Source of the DNA: Salpingoeca rosetta
Taxonomy: Eukaryota > Protista > Choanoflagellata
Direction: 5' to 3'
NCBI GenBank assembly: GCA_033442325.1
Contig: JAWQFM010000017.1
Coordinates: 803,639 to 867,638, forward strand
Length of the DNA: 64,000 nucleotides
Positions within the stretch are counted from its first letter, which is position 1, and each line of letters begins with the position of its first letter. This document shows, piece after piece, positions 8,261 to 34,749 of this stretch. Below the pieces are notes generated by a model, which had not been told where the DNA came from, did no database searches, and worked only from the letters and a program-made list of their open reading frames with translations. The position numbers were made by a program, and so were the translations under genes.

Positions 8261-16680
<8,420 letters not shown>

Positions 16681-17564: not shown

Positions 17565-23219
<5,655 letters not shown>

Positions 23220-23262: not shown

Positions 23263-24072
23263 NNNNNNNNNNNNNNNNNNNNNNNNNNNNNNNNNNNNNN
23301 NNNNNNNNNNNNNNNNNNNNNNNNNNNNNNNNNNNNNNNNNNNNNNNNNNNNNNNNNNNNNNNNNNNNNNNNNNNNNNNNNNNNNNNNNNNNNNNNNNNN
23401 NNNNNNNNNNNNNNNNNNNNNNNNNNNNNNNNNNNNNNNNNNNNNNNNNNNNNNNNNNNNNNNNNNNNNNNNNNNNNNNNNNNNNNNNNNNNNNNNNNNN
23501 NNNNNNNNNNNNNNNNNNNNNNNNNNNNNNNNNNNNNNNNNNNNNNNNNNNNNNNNNNNNNNNNNNNNNNNNNNNNNNNNNNNNNNNNNNNNNNNNNNNN
23601 NNNNNNNNNNNNNNNNNNNNNNNNNNNNNNNNNNNNNNNNNNNNNNNNNNNNNNNNNNNNNNNNNNNNNNNNNNNNNNNNNNNNNNNNNNNNNNNNNNNN
23701 NNNNNNNNNNNNNNNNNNNNNNNNNNNNNNNNNNNNNNNNNNNNNNNNNNNNNNNNNNNNNNNNNNNNNNNNNNNNNNNNNNNNNNNNNNNNNNNNNNNN
23801 NNNNNNNNNNNNNNNNNNNNNNNNNNNNNNNNNNNNNNNNNNNNNNNNNNNNNNNNNNNNNNNNNNNNNNNNNNNNNNNNNNNNNNNNNNNNNNNNNNNN
23901 NNNNNNNNNNNNNNNNNNNNNNNNNNNNNNNNNNNNNNNNNNNNNNNNNNNNNNNNNNNNNNNNNNNNNNNNNNNNNNNNNNNNNNNNNNNNNNNNNNNN
24001 NNNNNNNNNNNNNNNNNNNNNNNNNNNNNNNNNNNNNNNNNNNNNNNNNNNNNNNNNNNNNNNNNNNNNNNN
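23263..24072. other. Assembly gap (other gaps: 10590-10689, 31556-32181, 34432-34531)
   Basis: N runs. Confidence 1.
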
Positions 24073-25372: not shown

Positions 25373-26884
25373 TTACTTGCTGCCGTCGGACTTTCCCAGG
25401 GCGTTGGTGGCGTCGCGCTTCTTGATGTTCGCAAGCAGCGCCTGTCGGAGCGTGCTGCTGCTGATGGAGTGGCCGTACGCGCCGTCCTTCTCGTACATCT
25501 CGCCAATGTCAACGGCAAGACCCATGGTGGGCTGCTTGACGTAGTGCTTGTCATAGCACATCTTGCGGCAAATGACATCCACGCTCATGTAGCGCGGCAC
25601 GTACACGGGCAGGCCCATCTGCTCAAACACGGCGTAGTGCTTGTCGACGACGGCGCGCGTGCACACGCCCAGGATGAACGCCACCTCCGCGGTGATGCAC
25701 ATGCCGACGGCAATGGCCTCGCCGTGCAGCAGGGCGCAGTCCGACTCTGGCATGTGCAGGGAGAGAAACTCGACGGCGTGGCCGATGGCGTGGCCGTACT
25801 GCGGCAGCATCTCGTTGTAGTCGTTGGCAGTGTCACCGGAGAGGGTGGGCACCTTGTGGGCGATGGTCATGCGGATGATGTGCTCGAGGTAGGCGACGAG
25901 CTGGTCCTTGTCGTCGAGCATGTGGCGGTTCTGCAGCACGTAGTCCAGCATGTCCTGGGACTGCGTGATGGCGTGCTTGATGGACTCGCTGATGCCGTTG
26001 AGGAGGTGGCGGCGGCTGAGCGTCTGCAGGAGCTCCGGGTCCAGGATGATGGTGGTGGCTGGGTGATAGGCGCCCAGCAGGTTCTTGCCCTTGTGGTGGT
26101 TGACGGCCTGCTTGAAGTCGATGGCTGCGTCCACCTGGCCCATGGTGGTGGTGGAGAAGTGGACCAGGGTGATGCCGCGGTAGAGGGAGGCGGCGATGAA
26201 GCCGGCAATGTTGTTGACCACGCCCCCGCCCAGGGAGATGATGGCGCTGCGCTTGTCGATGCCGCGCTCCAGAATCTGGTCCACGCAGTCCGAGAACACC
26301 TTGAGGGTCTTGTGGCGCTCGGCAGAGGACTCGCCAGTCTCGTCCAGGGCATCGGCCGGGACGACAATCTTGTGGATGTCCAGGCCGGCGCTGCGCAGCC
26401 CGGACAGGATGCGCTCACCAAACAGCTCGTCGACGATTGTGTCGGTGATAATGTAATTGGTGGAGTCGTGGCAAATGGAGGGCATGACTTCCTTTCCGCA
26501 CTCGGCGAGGCGGCGGGTGATGCCGCGCTCCACGATGATCTCCGACTGCATCAGCTTGACGCGGTGGAAGCAGTTCTCGTAGCGCCTTGGTCCGTGCTGG
26601 CCGTTGGGCGCGGTGATGACGCCGGTGGGCAGGGAGAGGTCCCCGTCGTCCTCGGCCTGGCCTGATGAGTTGGAGCGCAGCTCGTCATCATCTTCGCTGC
26701 TGGCGCTGCTGGTGGCCGAGTCACATCGCGTTTTGCTGTGTGTGTCAGTGCATGAGCAAGCAATGTTTAGAGAGGTGGGGTGGGTGGTAGGTCAGGGGTG
26801 AGTCAGTGATGACACTGGAGAGAAAAACGAAGGGGAAAGAAGAAGGAATAGAAGGGGGGGGGGCATCAAGGCACACGAACTAGC

Positions 26885-26961
<77 letters not shown>

Positions 26962-27210
26962 GCATGCACAAGCAACCAATCACACACATACACACACACA
27001 CACAAGCAACCAACCAACCAACCACGCGCACAACATGCATGCGAGCAAGCACGCGAGGCAGCAACTGCGTGCTCACCTGCGAATAAAGGCCTTCTCGTCC
27101 TCGAGGGCGCGGAGATGCATGTCCTTGAGTTGACGGTCGGCATCCTTGATTTGGTCCTGATACTGCTCCTGGCGAGTCTGCTCAGTCGTGGCGTCCTCAA
27201 ACTTGGTCAT
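25373..27210 (-). CDS. Sugar-phosphate cyclase (dehydroquinate synthase superfamily), most like 2-deoxy-scyllo-inosose synthase (BtrC/DOIS); exons 27210-27077 and 26735-25373, about 498 aa
   Basis: In-frame GT-AG splice. Motifs GGGVVNNIAG, RGITLVHFSTT, DAAIDFKQAVN, GKNLLG, ESIKH, QYGHAIGHAVE, LLHGEAIAVGM. Superfamily is secure; the subfamily call is less so. Confidence 0.85.
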
Positions 27211-28665
27211 TGTGGCGGCAGTGACTTGAGGATTTGCCGAGACGTACTTGGCTGCTGCTGTGACTAACTCCTGTGTTGTGACTTGCAAAGCTTGAGTGCT
27301 GGTGGTTCCTGCGTGTCGTTTGCTCGTCTCCTTCCTGCTCCTGTTTCTTCTTCTTCTTAGCCTTGTCTTGCTTGCTTGGTCTACCGTGGTGACGTGAGTT
27401 GGGACAGGTGGGCGGGGATAAGGTCGGTCTTGTTCTCTTGCTGGTTATGCTTGGTTGGGGCTGAGGCCGAATGCTTGCGCCTGCTTGGGCCTTGTTGGTG
27501 TGGTTGCTGTCATGCGAGGTGGATGGTCGAGTTGGAAAATGAAGAAGACATGATGGGCTCTCCATCTCATACATCACCCCCCCCCCATCCGCATGTGTTT
27601 CTGGTATTGTCCACAAAAGCAAAGGCACACGGTGGGCTTGTTTCTCTCTGTCTCTCCTGAGTGGGCCAAGCGAACTGAATGTGTGAGTGGGTGTCTCAGT
27701 GATCATGGCCAATTCCGCTGCGTTCACACTTTCTGCTGTCCATTCTGTGTTCAGAGCTGCTGGCTGGTTTCTTGCGCCTTCTCTGCTGCTGCTGCTGCTG
27801 CTGCTGCTGCTTCGTGCCAGCCACGTTTTCCATTTCTTTCTTCCGCGTTCCCCAAAGGCCGCCCCGTGTGAAACTTAGGCAAAGGCTTGACGGTGATTCG
27901 CGAAACCAACCCCATGTCAGCCTAGCGAAGCAACATGCGTGGGGAATTTGCACTGGTGATGCTGCTGGTGGTGATGCTGGTGGTGGTGATGCACCCCCCA
28001 TCACAAGTTCACGTGGTTCGCAGACATCACACATCACATCACAACCGCCCGCTGCTGGGCAGTGCGCACCGCAACCCACGGCAGGCTGCGGGAAGTTTCT
28101 CTGCGCCTCTTCGGTCGACATTTAGGTATTTGTTGTGTCCACCGCCTCTTCTTGGGTTGATTGGTTTGTTTGTTTTTGTTTGCGTTGCCTACCTCTTGGG
28201 AGCTGTTTGGGTTTGTTGCGCTTGAACGAAGAAAACGGCCAACATCTTCGGCTGCTTGCGTCTCTTTGGATCTGGATGCTTCCGAGCGAGCGAGCGAGCC
28301 ACTTGAATGATGTGTGACAAGCCACGTGCTGCTGCTGCTGCATCTTGCTTGCTTGCTTGCTTGCTGGAAACTGGAAACTAAACGCGCGGTGCAGAAGAAA
28401 CGCTGATGAAAACATTGCAAATCGCACGCTGTTTGAAGAACAGAAATTTAGTGAAAGATGTCTGCAACTCTCCAAATCACACAGTCACGCCAGCCCCGGA
28501 ACGTTCCGAGCCGCGATGCTGCAATGGATGCGGGTGGTGGGTTGGCTGTGCAGTGCTGCAGTGCTCTTGGGCTGGATGGCTCGAAGAGAGAGCCACTTAT
28601 GATTGATTGTCCAGTAGCGTATGTCTCCTTGTCCAAGAGCAAAGAGAAAGGAAGAAGGAAGGAGG

Positions 28666-29173
28666 ATGTCGTCTGCTTCTGAAGAGGGAATTCCTTTGGT
28701 TGGCTTTGGAACCTTCAACGAGTAAGTCAGGCAAGCAGGCAGTGCGTGAGTGTGAGTTTGTGTGTGAGTGTGAGTGCGTGCGTGCGTGTGTGCGTGCGTG
28801 TGTGTGGGAGATAGAGACGAGAGAGAGAGAGAGAGAGTGTGTGTGTGTTGTGTGTGTTGTGTGTGCTGTGTGTGCTGTGTGTGCTGTGTGTGCGTGTGAG
28901 CTTGTGCGTGTGTGTGAGCGAGGATATGATGCTTGCTGCTTGGCTTTGGGTTGCACCCAGGCACGCAGGAGCACTTTGATGTCCTCACCCCCGTACCCCC
29001 GTACCAGTACCCCCCACCCTTCCAGCCTTGTCCTGACATTCACATCCCTCACCCGACAACGCTACGCGAGTGCCACAGGTTCAAGGACGAGGAGCGCGTG
29101 CGGGATGCGGTGAAGCACGCCCTGCGTATTGGGTACCGGCACCTGGACTGCGCTGCGCTGTACGGCAACGAGC

Positions 29174-29227
<54 letters not shown>

Positions 29228-29343
29228 CTGTGTGACTGTGTGTGTGGGGGGGGGACAGTGAAAGAGTGAAAAGCACAGCAGAGGGTAGCGTGCAGCGGAG
29301 GACGAGTTACCACGGTAGTGCTTTGAGTGTTAGATGCATGCAT

Positions 29344-29396
<53 letters not shown>

Positions 29397-30361
29397 CACG
29401 CACACACTCTCTCTTTCTCTCTCAATCTCACTCTCACACACTCTCTTTCTCTCTCAATCTCACTCTCACACACTCTCTTTCTCTCTCAAAGTCACTCTCA
29501 CACTCTCTCACACCCTCACTCTCACTCTCACATATGCACACATGTGCAAACACATGCACACATCCAACACTGCAGGCTGTGGGAGAGGCCATCAAGGCGA
29601 GCGTGGACGATGGCGCTGTGCGGAGAAACGAGGTGTACGTGGCCAGCAAACTGTGGAACAACCGGCACCGGCCACACCTGGTTGAGGACGCGTGCGCACA
29701 GAGCATGGCCGACCTTGGCGTGGACCACCTCGACTGCTACATGATGCACTGGCCGTGCCCTTGGACGCCAGAGTCTGCGCTCGTGAGCAAGGAGCTTGGC
29801 GGCAACTTCAAGTACGAACACGACATGGAGGTGAAGCTGGAGGACACGTGGAAGGCCATGGAACAGCTGTACCTGGACAAGAAGGTGCGGCATATCGGCG
29901 TGTCCAACTTCAGCATCCGGCAGCTGCAGGAGCTCATGGACGTGGCCAGCATCAAGCCCGCCGTCAACGAGGTGGAGCTGCACCCCTACCACCAGAACAC
30001 CAACCTGGTCAAGTTCTGCCAGAACAACGGCATCCACGTCACCGCCTACTCGCCGCTGGGCAAGATTGGCTACCGCAACCCGGGCGACCCGTGCCTGATT
30101 GACGACCCCGTGCTGCAAGATGTGGCCAAGCGCCACGCCAACAAGACGCCCGCGCAGGTGGCGCTCAAGTGGAACGTACAGCGCGGCGTGGGTGTGATCC
30201 CAAAGTCGCTCACACCAAGCAGGATCGAGAGCAACTTCAACCTGGACGACTTTTCGCTCACCGAGCGCGACATGCAGGAGATTGCTAAGCTAAACCGCAA
30301 CCATCGCTTTGTTCGCCCGCCATGGTGGTCGTTCCCAGACGACAAGCACGAGCTGCCATGA
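28666..30361 (+). CDS. Aldo-keto reductase; exons 28666-28721, 29079-29175, 29576-30361
   Basis: IPLVGFGT, GYRHLDCAALYGNE, SKLW, MHWP (D-Y-K-H tetrad intact), IGVSNF, VELHPY, AYSPLG, VIPKS. Confidence 0.95.
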
Positions 30362-30899: not shown

Positions 30900-32181
30900 T
30901 CAATGAGAGAGGCACTGGTTCACGACTTGAAGCAGGTTTGGGTTTTCCAACGCCGCCGCAACGCGTTCCTTGTCACTCAACTGCTTGTTCACTGCGTTGC
31001 ACCGTTCATGTGTGTGCGTGTGTAGTGAATGAGAGAGTGAGAGAGTGAGAGGCGGAGGAACGGAGGAGGGACAAGAGCGCACACAAATATACAAACGAAC
31101 CAAGACAGGCAGACAGACAGAGAAACAGACAGACACACAGACAGACAGAGAAACAGACAGAGAAACAGACAGACAGACAGACATACACACACAGACAGAC
31201 AGACAGACAGAAACAGACAGAGAAACAGACACACCACACCACAGCACAGCACATCACATCACAGCACAGCACATACAAGCACCCACACCCACACACACAC
31301 CACACACACACACGACAGCGTACCTTGGTCACGCGATACGTGTGAGCCAGGGAAGATTTCCACGTCCACTTTGAAGCGACGTGGCAACGAACGAAGCAAG
31401 CGCACACGAATGCACAGGCCAATCAGCGTTGCCATGCTGCAATGGGGGATGGTCGGTGTAAATTGCACACGCACAGCGTTGCCGGTGTCGTCCACGTCAA
31501 TCTGGTCTGTGATTGCATGCGTGCGAGTGTGTGTGTGTGTGTGTGTGGGGAGGGGNNNNNNNNNNNNNNNNNNNNNNNNNNNNNNNNNNNNNNNNNNNNN
31601 NNNNNNNNNNNNNNNNNNNNNNNNNNNNNNNNNNNNNNNNNNNNNNNNNNNNNNNNNNNNNNNNNNNNNNNNNNNNNNNNNNNNNNNNNNNNNNNNNNNN
31701 NNNNNNNNNNNNNNNNNNNNNNNNNNNNNNNNNNNNNNNNNNNNNNNNNNNNNNNNNNNNNNNNNNNNNNNNNNNNNNNNNNNNNNNNNNNNNNNNNNNN
31801 NNNNNNNNNNNNNNNNNNNNNNNNNNNNNNNNNNNNNNNNNNNNNNNNNNNNNNNNNNNNNNNNNNNNNNNNNNNNNNNNNNNNNNNNNNNNNNNNNNNN
31901 NNNNNNNNNNNNNNNNNNNNNNNNNNNNNNNNNNNNNNNNNNNNNNNNNNNNNNNNNNNNNNNNNNNNNNNNNNNNNNNNNNNNNNNNNNNNNNNNNNNN
32001 NNNNNNNNNNNNNNNNNNNNNNNNNNNNNNNNNNNNNNNNNNNNNNNNNNNNNNNNNNNNNNNNNNNNNNNNNNNNNNNNNNNNNNNNNNNNNNNNNNNN
32101 NNNNNNNNNNNNNNNNNNNNNNNNNNNNNNNNNNNNNNNNNNNNNNNNNNNNNNNNNNNNNNNNNNNNNNNNNNNNNNNNN

Positions 32182-34330: not shown

Positions 34331-34749
34331 CCTGCCTGTCTGTCTGTCTGTCTGTCTATCCACAGACCTACCCCCTTTTCGTCCCTTCCCTCATAACCCG
34401 CGACTTGTGCTGCCCTCCCATCATCCTCCCCNNNNNNNNNNNNNNNNNNNNNNNNNNNNNNNNNNNNNNNNNNNNNNNNNNNNNNNNNNNNNNNNNNNNN
34501 NNNNNNNNNNNNNNNNNNNNNNNNNNNNNNNTGATTCGCATCTATTGTATATGCGTCACTTCCTACACTCTGTCTTCTATTTTTTTTTTGTTTTTTTATT
34601 CTGTTTTCTTTTGCAGTGCTTGTCCTCATCTTGTATCAAATACCACCATTTCACACGCACACACACACACACACGTACACACACGCATGCACACACACAC
34701 ATGCACACACACACACACACACACACGCATATGCACACACACACACGCA

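What the first reader, a model, noticed from the sequence alone, without database searches (positions are those of the whole stretch)
25373..26735. DOIS-type fingerprints with a Glu-to-Gln change in the active-site loop: possible new sugar-phosphate cyclase subfamily, probably from HGT
Seen: GGGVVNNIAG (Asn where DHQS, EEVS and DDGS have Asp), KQAVN, GKNLLG, YGHAIGHAVE and HGEAIAVGM. These match my recollection of BtrC (GGGLTGNVAG, KQAVN, GKNLVG, EYGHTIGHAIE, HGEAIAVGM) better than DHQS (KTxxN, NLGHT), EEVS (D[FY]GHT) or DDGS (AYGHTWSP). Metal ligands E/H/H are retained. The residue before YGH is Gln rather than the catalytic Glu of DOIS, and DAAIDF replaces DSVLSI. Inference: the substrate or product may differ from that of known members. 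The catalytic domain is intron-free, consistent with bacterial origin.
Basis: partly seen in the sequence, partly recalled or inferred. Interest (0 to 1): 0.75.

Follow-up and report, generated by a model that had tools for sequence, protein, structure and literature searches.

The report
Unnamed cyclitol synthase with reductase partner
This Salpingoeca rosetta gene encodes an uncharacterised sugar-phosphate cyclase, sister to the antibiotic-pathway enzyme DOIS and always paired with a ketoreductase, so it probably makes an unidentified ring-shaped sugar alcohol in choanoflagellates, marine algae and bacterial capsules.

Summary
The BtrC motifs he recalled are correct.

It is not the shikimate enzyme. 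S. rosetta has a canonical AROM gene on another contig. This protein falls below the aroB cut-off and has Glu where DHQS has its carboxylate-binding Arg.

In a 58-row tree it belongs to a well-supported clade (100/99) that is sister to DOIS (99/96). The clade has an invariant signature: NN, DAAIDFKQAVN, NEMxPQYGH. The Gln is therefore family-wide, not a local substitution.

Eukaryotic members form one clade (100/99) nested among bacterial ones.

Function is inferred from partners. In bacteria a dedicated SDR sits next to the cyclase in every locus with enough flank, inside capsule or O-antigen loci. These often also carry an inositol-phosphate-cytidylyltransferase-like domain, a kinase and a DIPPS-like transferase. 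In eukaryotes a specific aldo-keto reductase is fused to the cyclase. In S. rosetta that reductase is the divergent neighbour (window about 28516-30361, plus strand).

Most likely the cyclase turns a sugar phosphate into a keto-cyclitol and the reductase makes the cyclitol. Substrate and product are unknown.

No RNA reads could be laid. I found no paper on this family.

The parts
25373..26737 (-). Exon 2 of the cyclase gene (residues 45-498 of P0001 plus the stop codon). It holds the whole DHQS-like fold: N-terminal NAD domain and C-terminal metal domain.
   Evidence: tblastn of P0001 is 100% identical. Pfam PF01761 and PF24621 match. The AlphaFold model has pLDDT 92.8 and a DHQS fold.
26738..27078 (-). 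Intron of the cyclase gene, rich in CA microsatellite.
   Evidence: It is the gap between the two P0001 segments, and GTGAGC follows exon 1.
27079..27210 (-). Exon 1 of the cyclase gene (residues 1-44). It encodes an acidic, low-complexity N-terminal extension with no domain.
27211..28515 (.). Region of about 1.3 kb between the two divergent start codons. It is a presumed shared promoter region, which was not tested.
   Evidence: Positions of the annotated start codons.
28516..28536 (+). Annotated first mini-exon of the aldo-keto reductase (MLQWMRV). The model is uncertain here.
   Evidence: The string occurs in the ORF 28345-28602 and at the N-terminus of P0121.
29026..29175 (+). Aldo-keto reductase exon (residues 8-57 of P0121).
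29576..30361 (+). Main aldo-keto reductase exon (residues 58-318 plus the stop codon). This is the partner reductase.
   Evidence: Pfam PF00248 at 2.6e-44. It is the best match in the genome to the AKR domain fused to the cyclase elsewhere, at 253 bits against 85 for the next hit. It falls in the same AKR subclade as the fused domains, SH-aLRT 100.

Best explanation
The gene encodes a member of a distinct, biochemically uncharacterised clade of NAD+- and metal-dependent sugar-phosphate cyclases in the DHQS superfamily. [quoted passage not shown]

Shown here: it is a second, divergent paralogue beside the organism's AROM DHQS. It keeps the metal ligands, the catalytic Lys and the phosphate-binding residues. 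It lacks the DAHP carboxylate-binding Arg, which is Glu247 here. It carries family-invariant residues: N113, N114, D145, F146, N246, E247, P250, Q251 and H336.

Inferred: like DOIS, it oxidises a (probably C6) sugar phosphate, eliminates phosphate and closes the ring by aldol condensation, giving a deoxy-inosose-type ketone. The Gln, like the Asn of DHQS, would leave the departing phosphate to act as the base. A dedicated ketoreductase then reduces the ketone to a deoxy-cyclitol. That reductase is the divergently transcribed AKR next door in S. rosetta, the same AKR fused to the cyclase in other protists, and a conserved SDR in bacteria.

In bacteria the cyclitol would be re-phosphorylated, CDP-activated and transferred into capsule or O-antigen polymers. 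In marine protists it is probably a free solute. The substrate and the exact product are unknown.
For: Clade position. The family scores 100/99, DOIS 100/99 and family plus DOIS 99/96 in a 58-row LG+C20 PMSF tree. The earlier 77-row quick tree gave the same topology.

Not DHQS. aroB TIGR01357 scores 226 bits against a cut-off of 305. A canonical AROM sits on contig C5, with a DHQS exon (GGGVVGDLAG, DSSIGGKTGVD) followed by EPSP synthase.

Fingerprint. See; the motifs are conserved in 114-117 of 120 homologues.

Reductase partnership in eukaryotes. AKR-cyclase fusions exist in P0015, P0022, P0026 and P0066. One of them is a continuous ORF on an 11-kb genomic contig. The S. rosetta neighbour is the genome's best match to that AKR domain. 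It belongs to the same AKR subclade as the fused domains, the Monosiga AKR and a thraustochytrid AKR that lies directly upstream of a cyclase fragment.

Reductase partnership in bacteria. An SDR that is 41-66% identical across phyla (full-length matches) lies beside the cyclase in every locus with enough flank.

Bacterial cassette. It resembles the di-myo-inositol-phosphate route: both nucleotidyltransferases hit the IPCT model (73 and 70 bits), the CDP-alcohol transferase hits archaetidylinositol-P synthase, DIPPS and PIP synthase, and there is an APH-type kinase.
Against: No enzyme of this clade has been assayed, so substrate, ring size and product are inferred only.

Both the family and DOIS sit on long stems (1.39 and 1.66). 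Long-branch attraction cannot be fully excluded, although two shared derived residues (N114, Q148) agree with the grouping.

The catalytic Glu of DOIS is absent.

The AKR is unlinked to the cyclase in Monosiga and is not within 10 kb in Porphyridium. The AKR subfamily is only moderately separated in identity from generic AKR1 enzymes (45-51% against 43-48%).

Expression and co-expression in S. rosetta could not be checked.

No EboD/DEIS, EVS or DDGS reference sequence was in the tree.
Confidence: 0.6

Rival explanations
1. It is simply a functional DOIS: glucose-6-phosphate to 2-deoxy-scyllo-inosose, with Gln doing the job of Glu243. The AKR would then give 2-deoxy-scyllo-inositol or a quercitol.
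For: It is sister to DOIS. It shares N114, Q148 and Y252 with DOIS and keeps the phosphate-binding and metal residues. One Porphyridium paralogue is auto-annotated as DOIS.
Against: The clade is separated from DOIS by long, fully supported stems. Nine active-site-region positions are invariant in the family and differ from DOIS, including the Glu that is (from my memory of the BtrC structural work) the DOIS-specific catalytic residue. No bacterial member sits with 2-deoxystreptamine genes, whereas the reference DOIS genes do (against 16, 17, 22, 23, 67, 68).
Confidence: 0.2
2. It is a C7 cyclase acting on sedoheptulose 7-phosphate (EEVS, EVS or DDGS type), or an EboD-like mannose-6-P cyclase.
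For: It has the same fold. Foldseek scores ValA (TM 0.77) as high as DHQS. Eukaryotic EEVS and DDGS genes are known (PMC4426668).
Against: The S7P cyclases form a separate 100/100 clade. They differ at the diagnostic sites: Asp in place of Q251, Met in place of K233 and Pro in place of H258. PDB sequence scores are lower, at 1e-29 and 3.5e-24 against 2e-35 for DOIS. No ebo-type neighbours (UbiA prenyltransferase and others) appear in any bacterial locus. EboD itself was not available for comparison.
Confidence: 0.08
3. It is not a cyclase but a plain NAD-dependent oxidoreductase of the DHQS/Fe-ADH/glycerol-1-P-dehydrogenase superfamily, acting on a polyol phosphate or NDP-sugar in glycopolymer synthesis.
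For: Weak PF13685 (Fe-ADH_2) hits occur in several members. The bacterial genes lie among CDP-alcohol and teichoic-acid-like genes.
Against: Scores to DHQS models are far higher (226 bits for aroB). All the residues that DHQS and DOIS use for phosphate binding and elimination are invariant: R125, K147, N157, K233, H258 and K335. The constant partnership with a ketoreductase fits a keto product.
Confidence: 0.07
4. It is a redundant or specialised 3-dehydroquinate synthase, as currently annotated.
For: The database name says so, and the best PDB sequence hits are DHQS (1.5e-38).
Against: It falls below the aroB equivalog cut-off. The Arg that binds the DAHP carboxylate is Glu, and Asn268 is Gln. 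It lies outside the DHQS rows in both trees. A canonical AROM is present.
Confidence: 0.03

Closest known systems
[quoted passage not shown]
   Same: It is the sister clade (99/96). It shares Asn in the GGGxxxN motif, Lys-Gln in KQAVN, Tyr before Gly-His, HGEAIAVGM, the metal ligands and the phosphate-binding residues.
   Different: Gln replaces the DOIS Glu. The family has its own N113, D145-F146, N246-E247, P250 and H336. It is never found with 2-deoxystreptamine aminotransferase, dehydrogenase or glycosyltransferase genes. It is partnered with a ketoreductase, and it occurs in eukaryotes.
3-dehydroquinate synthase (AroB; DHQS domain of AROM)
   Same: Same fold (TM 0.74-0.78), same NAD and metal chemistry, and the best PDB sequence scores.
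   Different: It falls below the aroB cut-off. Asp becomes Asn in the NAD loop, GG becomes DF before the catalytic Lys, Arg264 becomes Glu and Asn268 becomes Gln. The genome has a separate AROM.
Sedoheptulose-7-phosphate cyclases (EEVS ValA 4p53, DDGS 5tpr, EVS) and EboD/DEIS
   Same: They belong to the same superfamily. They include other SPCs that spread to eukaryotes by gene transfer (PMC4426668, PMC5133447).
   Different: They form a separate clade with different diagnostic residues. EboD works in the ebo operon with a prenyltransferase (PMC5133447, PMC12904256), a context not seen here. EboD was not compared directly.
Di-myo-inositol-phosphate and CDP-inositol pathway (IPCT/DIPPS)
   Same: The bacterial cassette carries IPCT-like nucleotidyltransferases and a DIPPS/PIP-synthase-like CDP-alcohol transferase. 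This implies a CDP-activated cyclitol phosphate.
   Different: [quoted passage not shown] The eukaryotic genes lack these parts.

Membership tests
Sugar-phosphate cyclase (DHQS-like) superfamily | DHQ_synthase N- and C-terminal domains and the DHQS fold | tested here: met
   PF01761 at 2.6e-32 and PF24621 at 1.9e-21. The model has pLDDT 92.8 and matches DHQS, DOIS and EEVS structures at TM 0.71-0.78.
Sugar-phosphate cyclase (DHQS-like) superfamily | Metal ligands Glu/His/His, the catalytic Lys and the phosphate-binding Arg/Asn/Lys/His | tested here: met
   E189, H254, H276, K147, R125, N157, K192, K233, H258 and K335 are invariant in 63 family rows and match the references.
3-dehydroquinate synthase (AroB, TIGR01357) | Score at or above the equivalog cut-off | tested here: not met
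   226.3 bits against a cut-off of 305.
3-dehydroquinate synthase (AroB, TIGR01357) | Arg that binds the DAHP carboxylate (A. nidulans R264) and Asn268 in NxGH | tested here: not met
   Here they are Glu247 and Gln251. The aroB references have Arg and Asn. The A. nidulans numbering is from my memory of the structure papers.
3-dehydroquinate synthase (AroB, TIGR01357) | Branches within DHQS sequences | tested here: not met
   It lies outside aroB, AROM and aminoDHQS. The family clade scores 100/99.
3-dehydroquinate synthase (AroB, TIGR01357) | DAHP-to-DHQ activity and aroB complementation | not testable with these tools
   This needs a bench experiment.
2-deoxy-scyllo-inosose synthase | Glu before YGH (BtrC E243) | tested here: not met
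   It is Gln in 63/63 family rows and Glu in 4/4 DOIS-group references and in 2d2x.
2-deoxy-scyllo-inosose synthase | Branches within DOIS sequences | tested here: not met
   It is sister to the DOIS clade, not inside it (DOIS 100/99). Only four DOIS-group references were used.
2-deoxy-scyllo-inosose synthase | Genomic association with 2-deoxystreptamine genes (DegT aminotransferase, radical-SAM or dehydrogenase, PIG-L deacetylase, glycosyltransferase) | tested here: not met
   These genes are present around the reference DOIS genes. Family members have no such 2-deoxystreptamine set beside the cyclase; the DegT genes elsewhere in some capsule loci look like ordinary sugar aminotransferases. 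The core module is an SDR, with or without IPCT-like, kinase and CDP-alcohol-transferase genes.
2-deoxy-scyllo-inosose synthase | G6P-to-DOI activity | not testable with these tools
   This needs an enzyme assay.
Sedoheptulose-7-phosphate cyclases (EEVS/EVS/DDGS) | Asp before [FY]GH, plus clade membership | tested here: not met
   The S7P cyclase references have Asp, and Met and Pro at two other sites. They form a separate 100/100 clade. The references are named by PGAP only.
[quoted passage not shown] | Membership of the ebo operon (EboA-F, with a UbiA prenyltransferase) | tested here: not met
[quoted passage not shown] | Sequence clade membership | not tested
   No EboD sequence could be obtained.

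The most novel reading that the evidence does not exclude
The cyclase-AKR pair is the missing, myo-inositol-independent route to the deoxy-cyclitol compatible solutes of marine protists. These are quercitol- or cyclohexanetetrol-type carbocyclic polyols, which are reported in diatoms and haptophytes without a known pathway (PMC5334607, PMC7998644). Choanoflagellates share this route. Its bacterial ancestor builds a previously unrecognised CDP-deoxy-cyclitol-phosphate unit for capsules and O-antigens. The two extra acidic residues in the pocket (D145, E247) might even mean an amino-sugar phosphate substrate.
Probability: 0.2. Interest if true: 0.8.

Novelty: new variant of a known kind. Interest (0 to 1): 0.62.

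Why it matters
Only a handful of reaction types are known in the sugar-phosphate cyclase superfamily: DHQS, aminoDHQS, DOIS, EEVS, EVS, DDGS and, most recently, DEIS. Each new one opened a class of natural products.

This clade is as deeply separated as those, and it has its own active-site signature. It occurs in the closest unicellular relatives of animals, in major marine algal groups, and in cultivable bacteria such as Rhodopseudomonas palustris BisB18, Paraburkholderia and Trinickia.

Three independent kinds of partner evidence point to a cyclase-plus-ketoreductase module: gene fusion, neighbourhood in eukaryotes, and a conserved operon in bacteria. That gives a directly testable two-enzyme pathway. 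It also gives a candidate for cyclitol osmolytes whose biosynthesis is unknown, and a likely new building block of bacterial surface polymers.

Finally, it corrects a widespread "3-dehydroquinate synthase" mis-annotation.

Tried and rejected
- **RNA evidence.** The later mapping of the AKR model used only 28897 onward. One local script used the whole window as a BLAST subject for a protein query.
- **Spliced models.** Exons were searched by reference, P0001 and P0121 are database proteins, and only one exon of AROM was used.
- **Direct IQ-TREE bootstrap runs.** They failed or timed out. The resumable careful run finished.
- **Foldseek against PDB.** It does not discriminate between DHQS, DOIS and EEVS.
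- **ESM Atlas feature search.** Uninformative.
- **AKR near the cyclase in other eukaryotes.** No AKR lies within 10 kb in Monosiga or Porphyridium.
- **Bacterial partner SDR in S. rosetta.** It has no orthologue there; the best hit is 36% identical.
- **Literature.** Searches on SPCs in choanoflagellates or algae, cyclitols in capsules, bradyrhizose and the CDP-2-glycerol genes found nothing on this family. PMC5400686, the survey of C7-cyclitol synthases, is not held.
- **CDP-2-glycerol idea.** I considered that the bacterial SDR, kinase and nucleotidyltransferase trio might be a CDP-2-glycerol pathway unrelated to the cyclase. I set this aside because the SDR also travels with the stand-alone cyclase where kinase and transferase are absent.

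Full report
**What is there**

The window is Salpingoeca rosetta DNA. The 392-aa ORF at 25373-26551 (minus strand) is 100% identical to an NCBI protein named "3-dehydroquinate synthase [Salpingoeca rosetta]" (P0001, 498 aa).

Mapping that protein gives two exons, 27079-27210 and 25373-26737, separated by an intron that starts GTGAGC.

His remembered BtrC motifs are confirmed residue by residue in the HMMER alignment to PDB 2d2x.

**Not the shikimate enzyme**

- The protein scores 226 bits on NCBIfam aroB, against a cut-off of 305.
- The same genome has a canonical AROM gene on contig C5. Its DHQS exon (GGGVVGDLAG, DSSIGGKTGVD; 166 bits on PF01761) is followed directly by EPSP synthase.
- PDB sequence scores are nearly equal for DHQS (1.5e-38) and DOIS (2.1e-35). 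They are lower for EEVS (1e-29) and DDGS (3.5e-24).

**A family with its own signature**

The word-index search found 965 relatives. The top 120 are 44-83% identical. They come from these sources:

- Monosiga brevicollis
- red algae (Porphyridium, three copies)
- a diatom
- pelagophyte, chrysophyte-like and chlorarachniophyte transcriptomes
- the haptophyte Prymnesium
- about 35 proteins of about 625 aa that carry an N-terminal nucleotidyltransferase

In 114-117 of these 120, the strings NN (after GGGxx), DAA[IL]DFKQA[VI]N and Q[YF]GH are present.

I fetched annotated references from plasmid records:

- Two DOIS genes validated by their 2-deoxystreptamine-type neighbours, from Sodalis and Burkholderia.
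- Two further DOIS-group Streptomyces genes.
- Three sedoheptulose-7-P cyclases.
- One aminoDHQS inside an AHBA cluster.
- Five aroB genes sitting in shikimate operons.

The alignment gave this fingerprint, in S. rosetta ORF numbering:

| Position | This family | DOIS | DHQS | S7P cyclases |
|---|---|---|---|---|
| N114 | Asn | Asn | Asp | Asp |
| Q148 | Gln | Gln | Thr | Thr |
| Q251 | Gln | Glu | Asn | Asp |
| E247 | Glu | Gly/Ala | Arg | variable |

- E247 is at the position of the DHQS Arg that, from my knowledge of the A. nidulans structure, binds the DAHP carboxylate.
- N113, D145, F146, N246, P250 and H336 are invariant in the family and found in no other class.
- The metal ligands, the catalytic Lys and the phosphate-binding residues are conserved in all classes.

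**Phylogeny**

A 77-row quick tree and a 58-row careful tree (IQ-TREE, LG+C20+F+G4 PMSF) agree. Support below is UFBoot/SH-aLRT from the careful tree.

| Grouping | Support |
|---|---|
| The family | 100/99 |
| DOIS group | 100/99 |
| Family + DOIS | 99/96 |
| S7P cyclases (outside) | 100/100 |
| All eukaryote-type members as one clade | 100/99 |
| Eukaryotes + nucleotidyltransferase-fusion bacteria | 92/96 |
| Choanoflagellates (S. rosetta, Monosiga, three unnamed) | 100/96 |
| The remaining (algal) eukaryotes, the sister group of the choanoflagellates | 82/95 |

- The aroB, aminoDHQS and AROM rows also lie outside the family.
- Stand-alone bacterial genes are more basal than the fusion bacteria.
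- The family and DOIS stems are both long, so their sister relation carries a long-branch caveat. The shared derived residues agree with it.
- GC3 of the gene is 0.91, similar to the neighbouring AKR at 0.86. Any transfer is therefore old.

**Bacterial context**

In MAGs of Gammaproteobacteria, Saccharibacteria/Patescibacteria and Magasanikiibacteriota, the fusion gene sits in a conserved block inside Kps-type capsule loci. The block reads:

1. a CDP-alcohol phosphotransferase-like gene
2. the nucleotidyltransferase::cyclase fusion
3. an SDR
4. an APH-type kinase
5. a second nucleotidyltransferase

NCBIfam places both nucleotidyltransferases nearest to L-myo-inositol-1-phosphate cytidylyltransferase (73 and 70 bits). 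It places the transferase nearest to archaetidylinositol-phosphate synthase, DIPPS and PIP synthase.

In Rhodopseudomonas palustris BisB18, Rhodopseudomonas AAP120, Paraburkholderia atlantica, Trinickia symbiotica, Burkholderia diffusa, Sulfurovum, and Chloroflexi and Bdellovibrionales MAGs, the cyclase is stand-alone.

The constant element everywhere is one SDR. Its full-length matches are 41-66% identical across phyla, and it lies within about 0-4.5 kb of the cyclase in all but two of the 19 genome loci and in the three metagenome loci checked. The two exceptions end too close to the gene.

**Eukaryotic context**

S. rosetta has no orthologue of that SDR; the best hit is 36% identical. Eukaryotes use an aldo-keto reductase instead.

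- Four homologues carry an AKR domain fused in front of the cyclase. In one the fusion is a continuous 676-codon ORF on an 11-kb genomic contig of a photosynthetic eukaryote.
- tblastn of those fusions against the window hits an AKR gene on the opposite strand at 29603-30355. An earlier scan note (s1-432422) had also flagged this pair.
- That AKR (P0121, annotated "2,5-didehydrogluconate reductase") is by far the best match in the 55-Mb genome to the fused domain: 253 bits and 51% identity, against 85 bits for the next hit.
- In an AKR tree it falls with its choanoflagellate orthologues (including Monosiga), the four fused domains and a thraustochytrid AKR. This 12-row clade (SH-aLRT 100) is separate from vertebrate and insect AKR1 and from bacterial aldehyde reductases.
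- In the thraustochytrid Hondaea, that AKR is followed 200 bp downstream, in the same frame, by the C-terminal half of the cyclase.
- In S. rosetta the two genes are head to head, with start codons about 1.3 kb apart. In Monosiga both genes exist but on different scaffolds.

**Interpretation**

Shown:

- It is a distinct SPC clade, sister to DOIS.
- It is not DHQS.
- The family's distribution across bacteria and eukaryotes was mapped, and the eukaryotic members are nested among the bacterial ones.
- There is a tight, repeatedly re-invented partnership with a ketoreductase.

Inferred:

- The enzyme performs the DHQS/DOIS type of oxidation, phosphate elimination and aldol ring closure on a non-carboxylated, probably C6, sugar phosphate.
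- The reductase turns the resulting ketone into a deoxy-cyclitol.
- Bacteria re-phosphorylate the cyclitol and CDP-activate it for surface polymers, by analogy with CDP-inositol chemistry.
- Protists probably keep it as a solute.

Cyclohexanetetrol-type osmolytes are reported in diatoms and haptophytes (PMC5334607, PMC7998644). A link to them is only a possibility.

**Limits**

- There is no assay.
- No RNA reads could be laid. I worked beside those places and sent none of their letters to any search.
- EboD, EVS and DDGS were not in the tree.
- Many "eukaryotic" rows are unnamed transcriptome or metagenome proteins. I placed them by their position among named eukaryotes.
- The structure model (pLDDT 92.8) confirms the fold but cannot separate the classes.

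Noticed in passing
L062:10412-12055 (Hondaea fermentalgiana BEYU01000009.1): The cyclase-type AKR is followed 200 bp later, in the same frame, by only the C-terminal half of the cyclase (QYGH and LHGE are present; the NAD domain is absent). This is either a truncated fusion or an assembly or annotation problem.
   Followed up: partly
L016:7256-8542(-) and 10001-11287(+); L015:10001-11290: Porphyridium purpureum has three copies of the cyclase. Two are adjacent and divergently oriented. No AKR lies within 10 kb.
   Followed up: no
L001:9252-14307 (also L003, L011, L012, L039, L041, L042, L044): A conserved five-gene bacterial cassette sits in Kps-type capsule loci of uncultured Gammaproteobacteria and CPR bacteria. 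It comprises a DIPPS/PIP-synthase-like transferase, an IPCT-like::cyclase fusion, an SDR, an APH-type kinase and a second IPCT-like transferase. It looks like a route to a CDP-activated cyclitol phosphate.
   Followed up: partly
L053:7992-10896 (Rhodopseudomonas palustris BisB18, NC_007925, about 4.66 Mb); also L051, L052, L055: A stand-alone cyclase, the partner SDR and a DUF5672 protein sit together. In L053 they lie inside an O-antigen-type locus (RgpF, GT4, ABC transporter, RmlD). This offers a cultivable organism in which to look for a cyclitol in LPS.
   Followed up: partly
G000:C5:758879-763094 (-): A canonical AROM-type gene (DHQS exon followed by EPSP synthase) shows that S. rosetta keeps at least the start of a fungal-type shikimate pathway.
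   Followed up: partly
window 28516-29175: The annotated N-terminus of the AKR (MLQWMRV / PCPDIHIPH...) lacks the usual AKR N-terminal strands, so the 5' part of the gene model may be wrong. Its first intron contains 28804-28896, which I did not examine.
   Followed up: no
window 17565-23219: An earlier scan note (s1-432433) describes a PKC-like kinase gene here with EF-hands in place of C1 domains. I did not examine it.
   Followed up: no
window 10590-10689, 23263-24072, 31556-32181, 34432-34531: Assembly gaps (runs of N) are flanked by CA/GA microsatellites. One gap lies 1.3 kb downstream of the cyclase stop codon.
   Followed up: no
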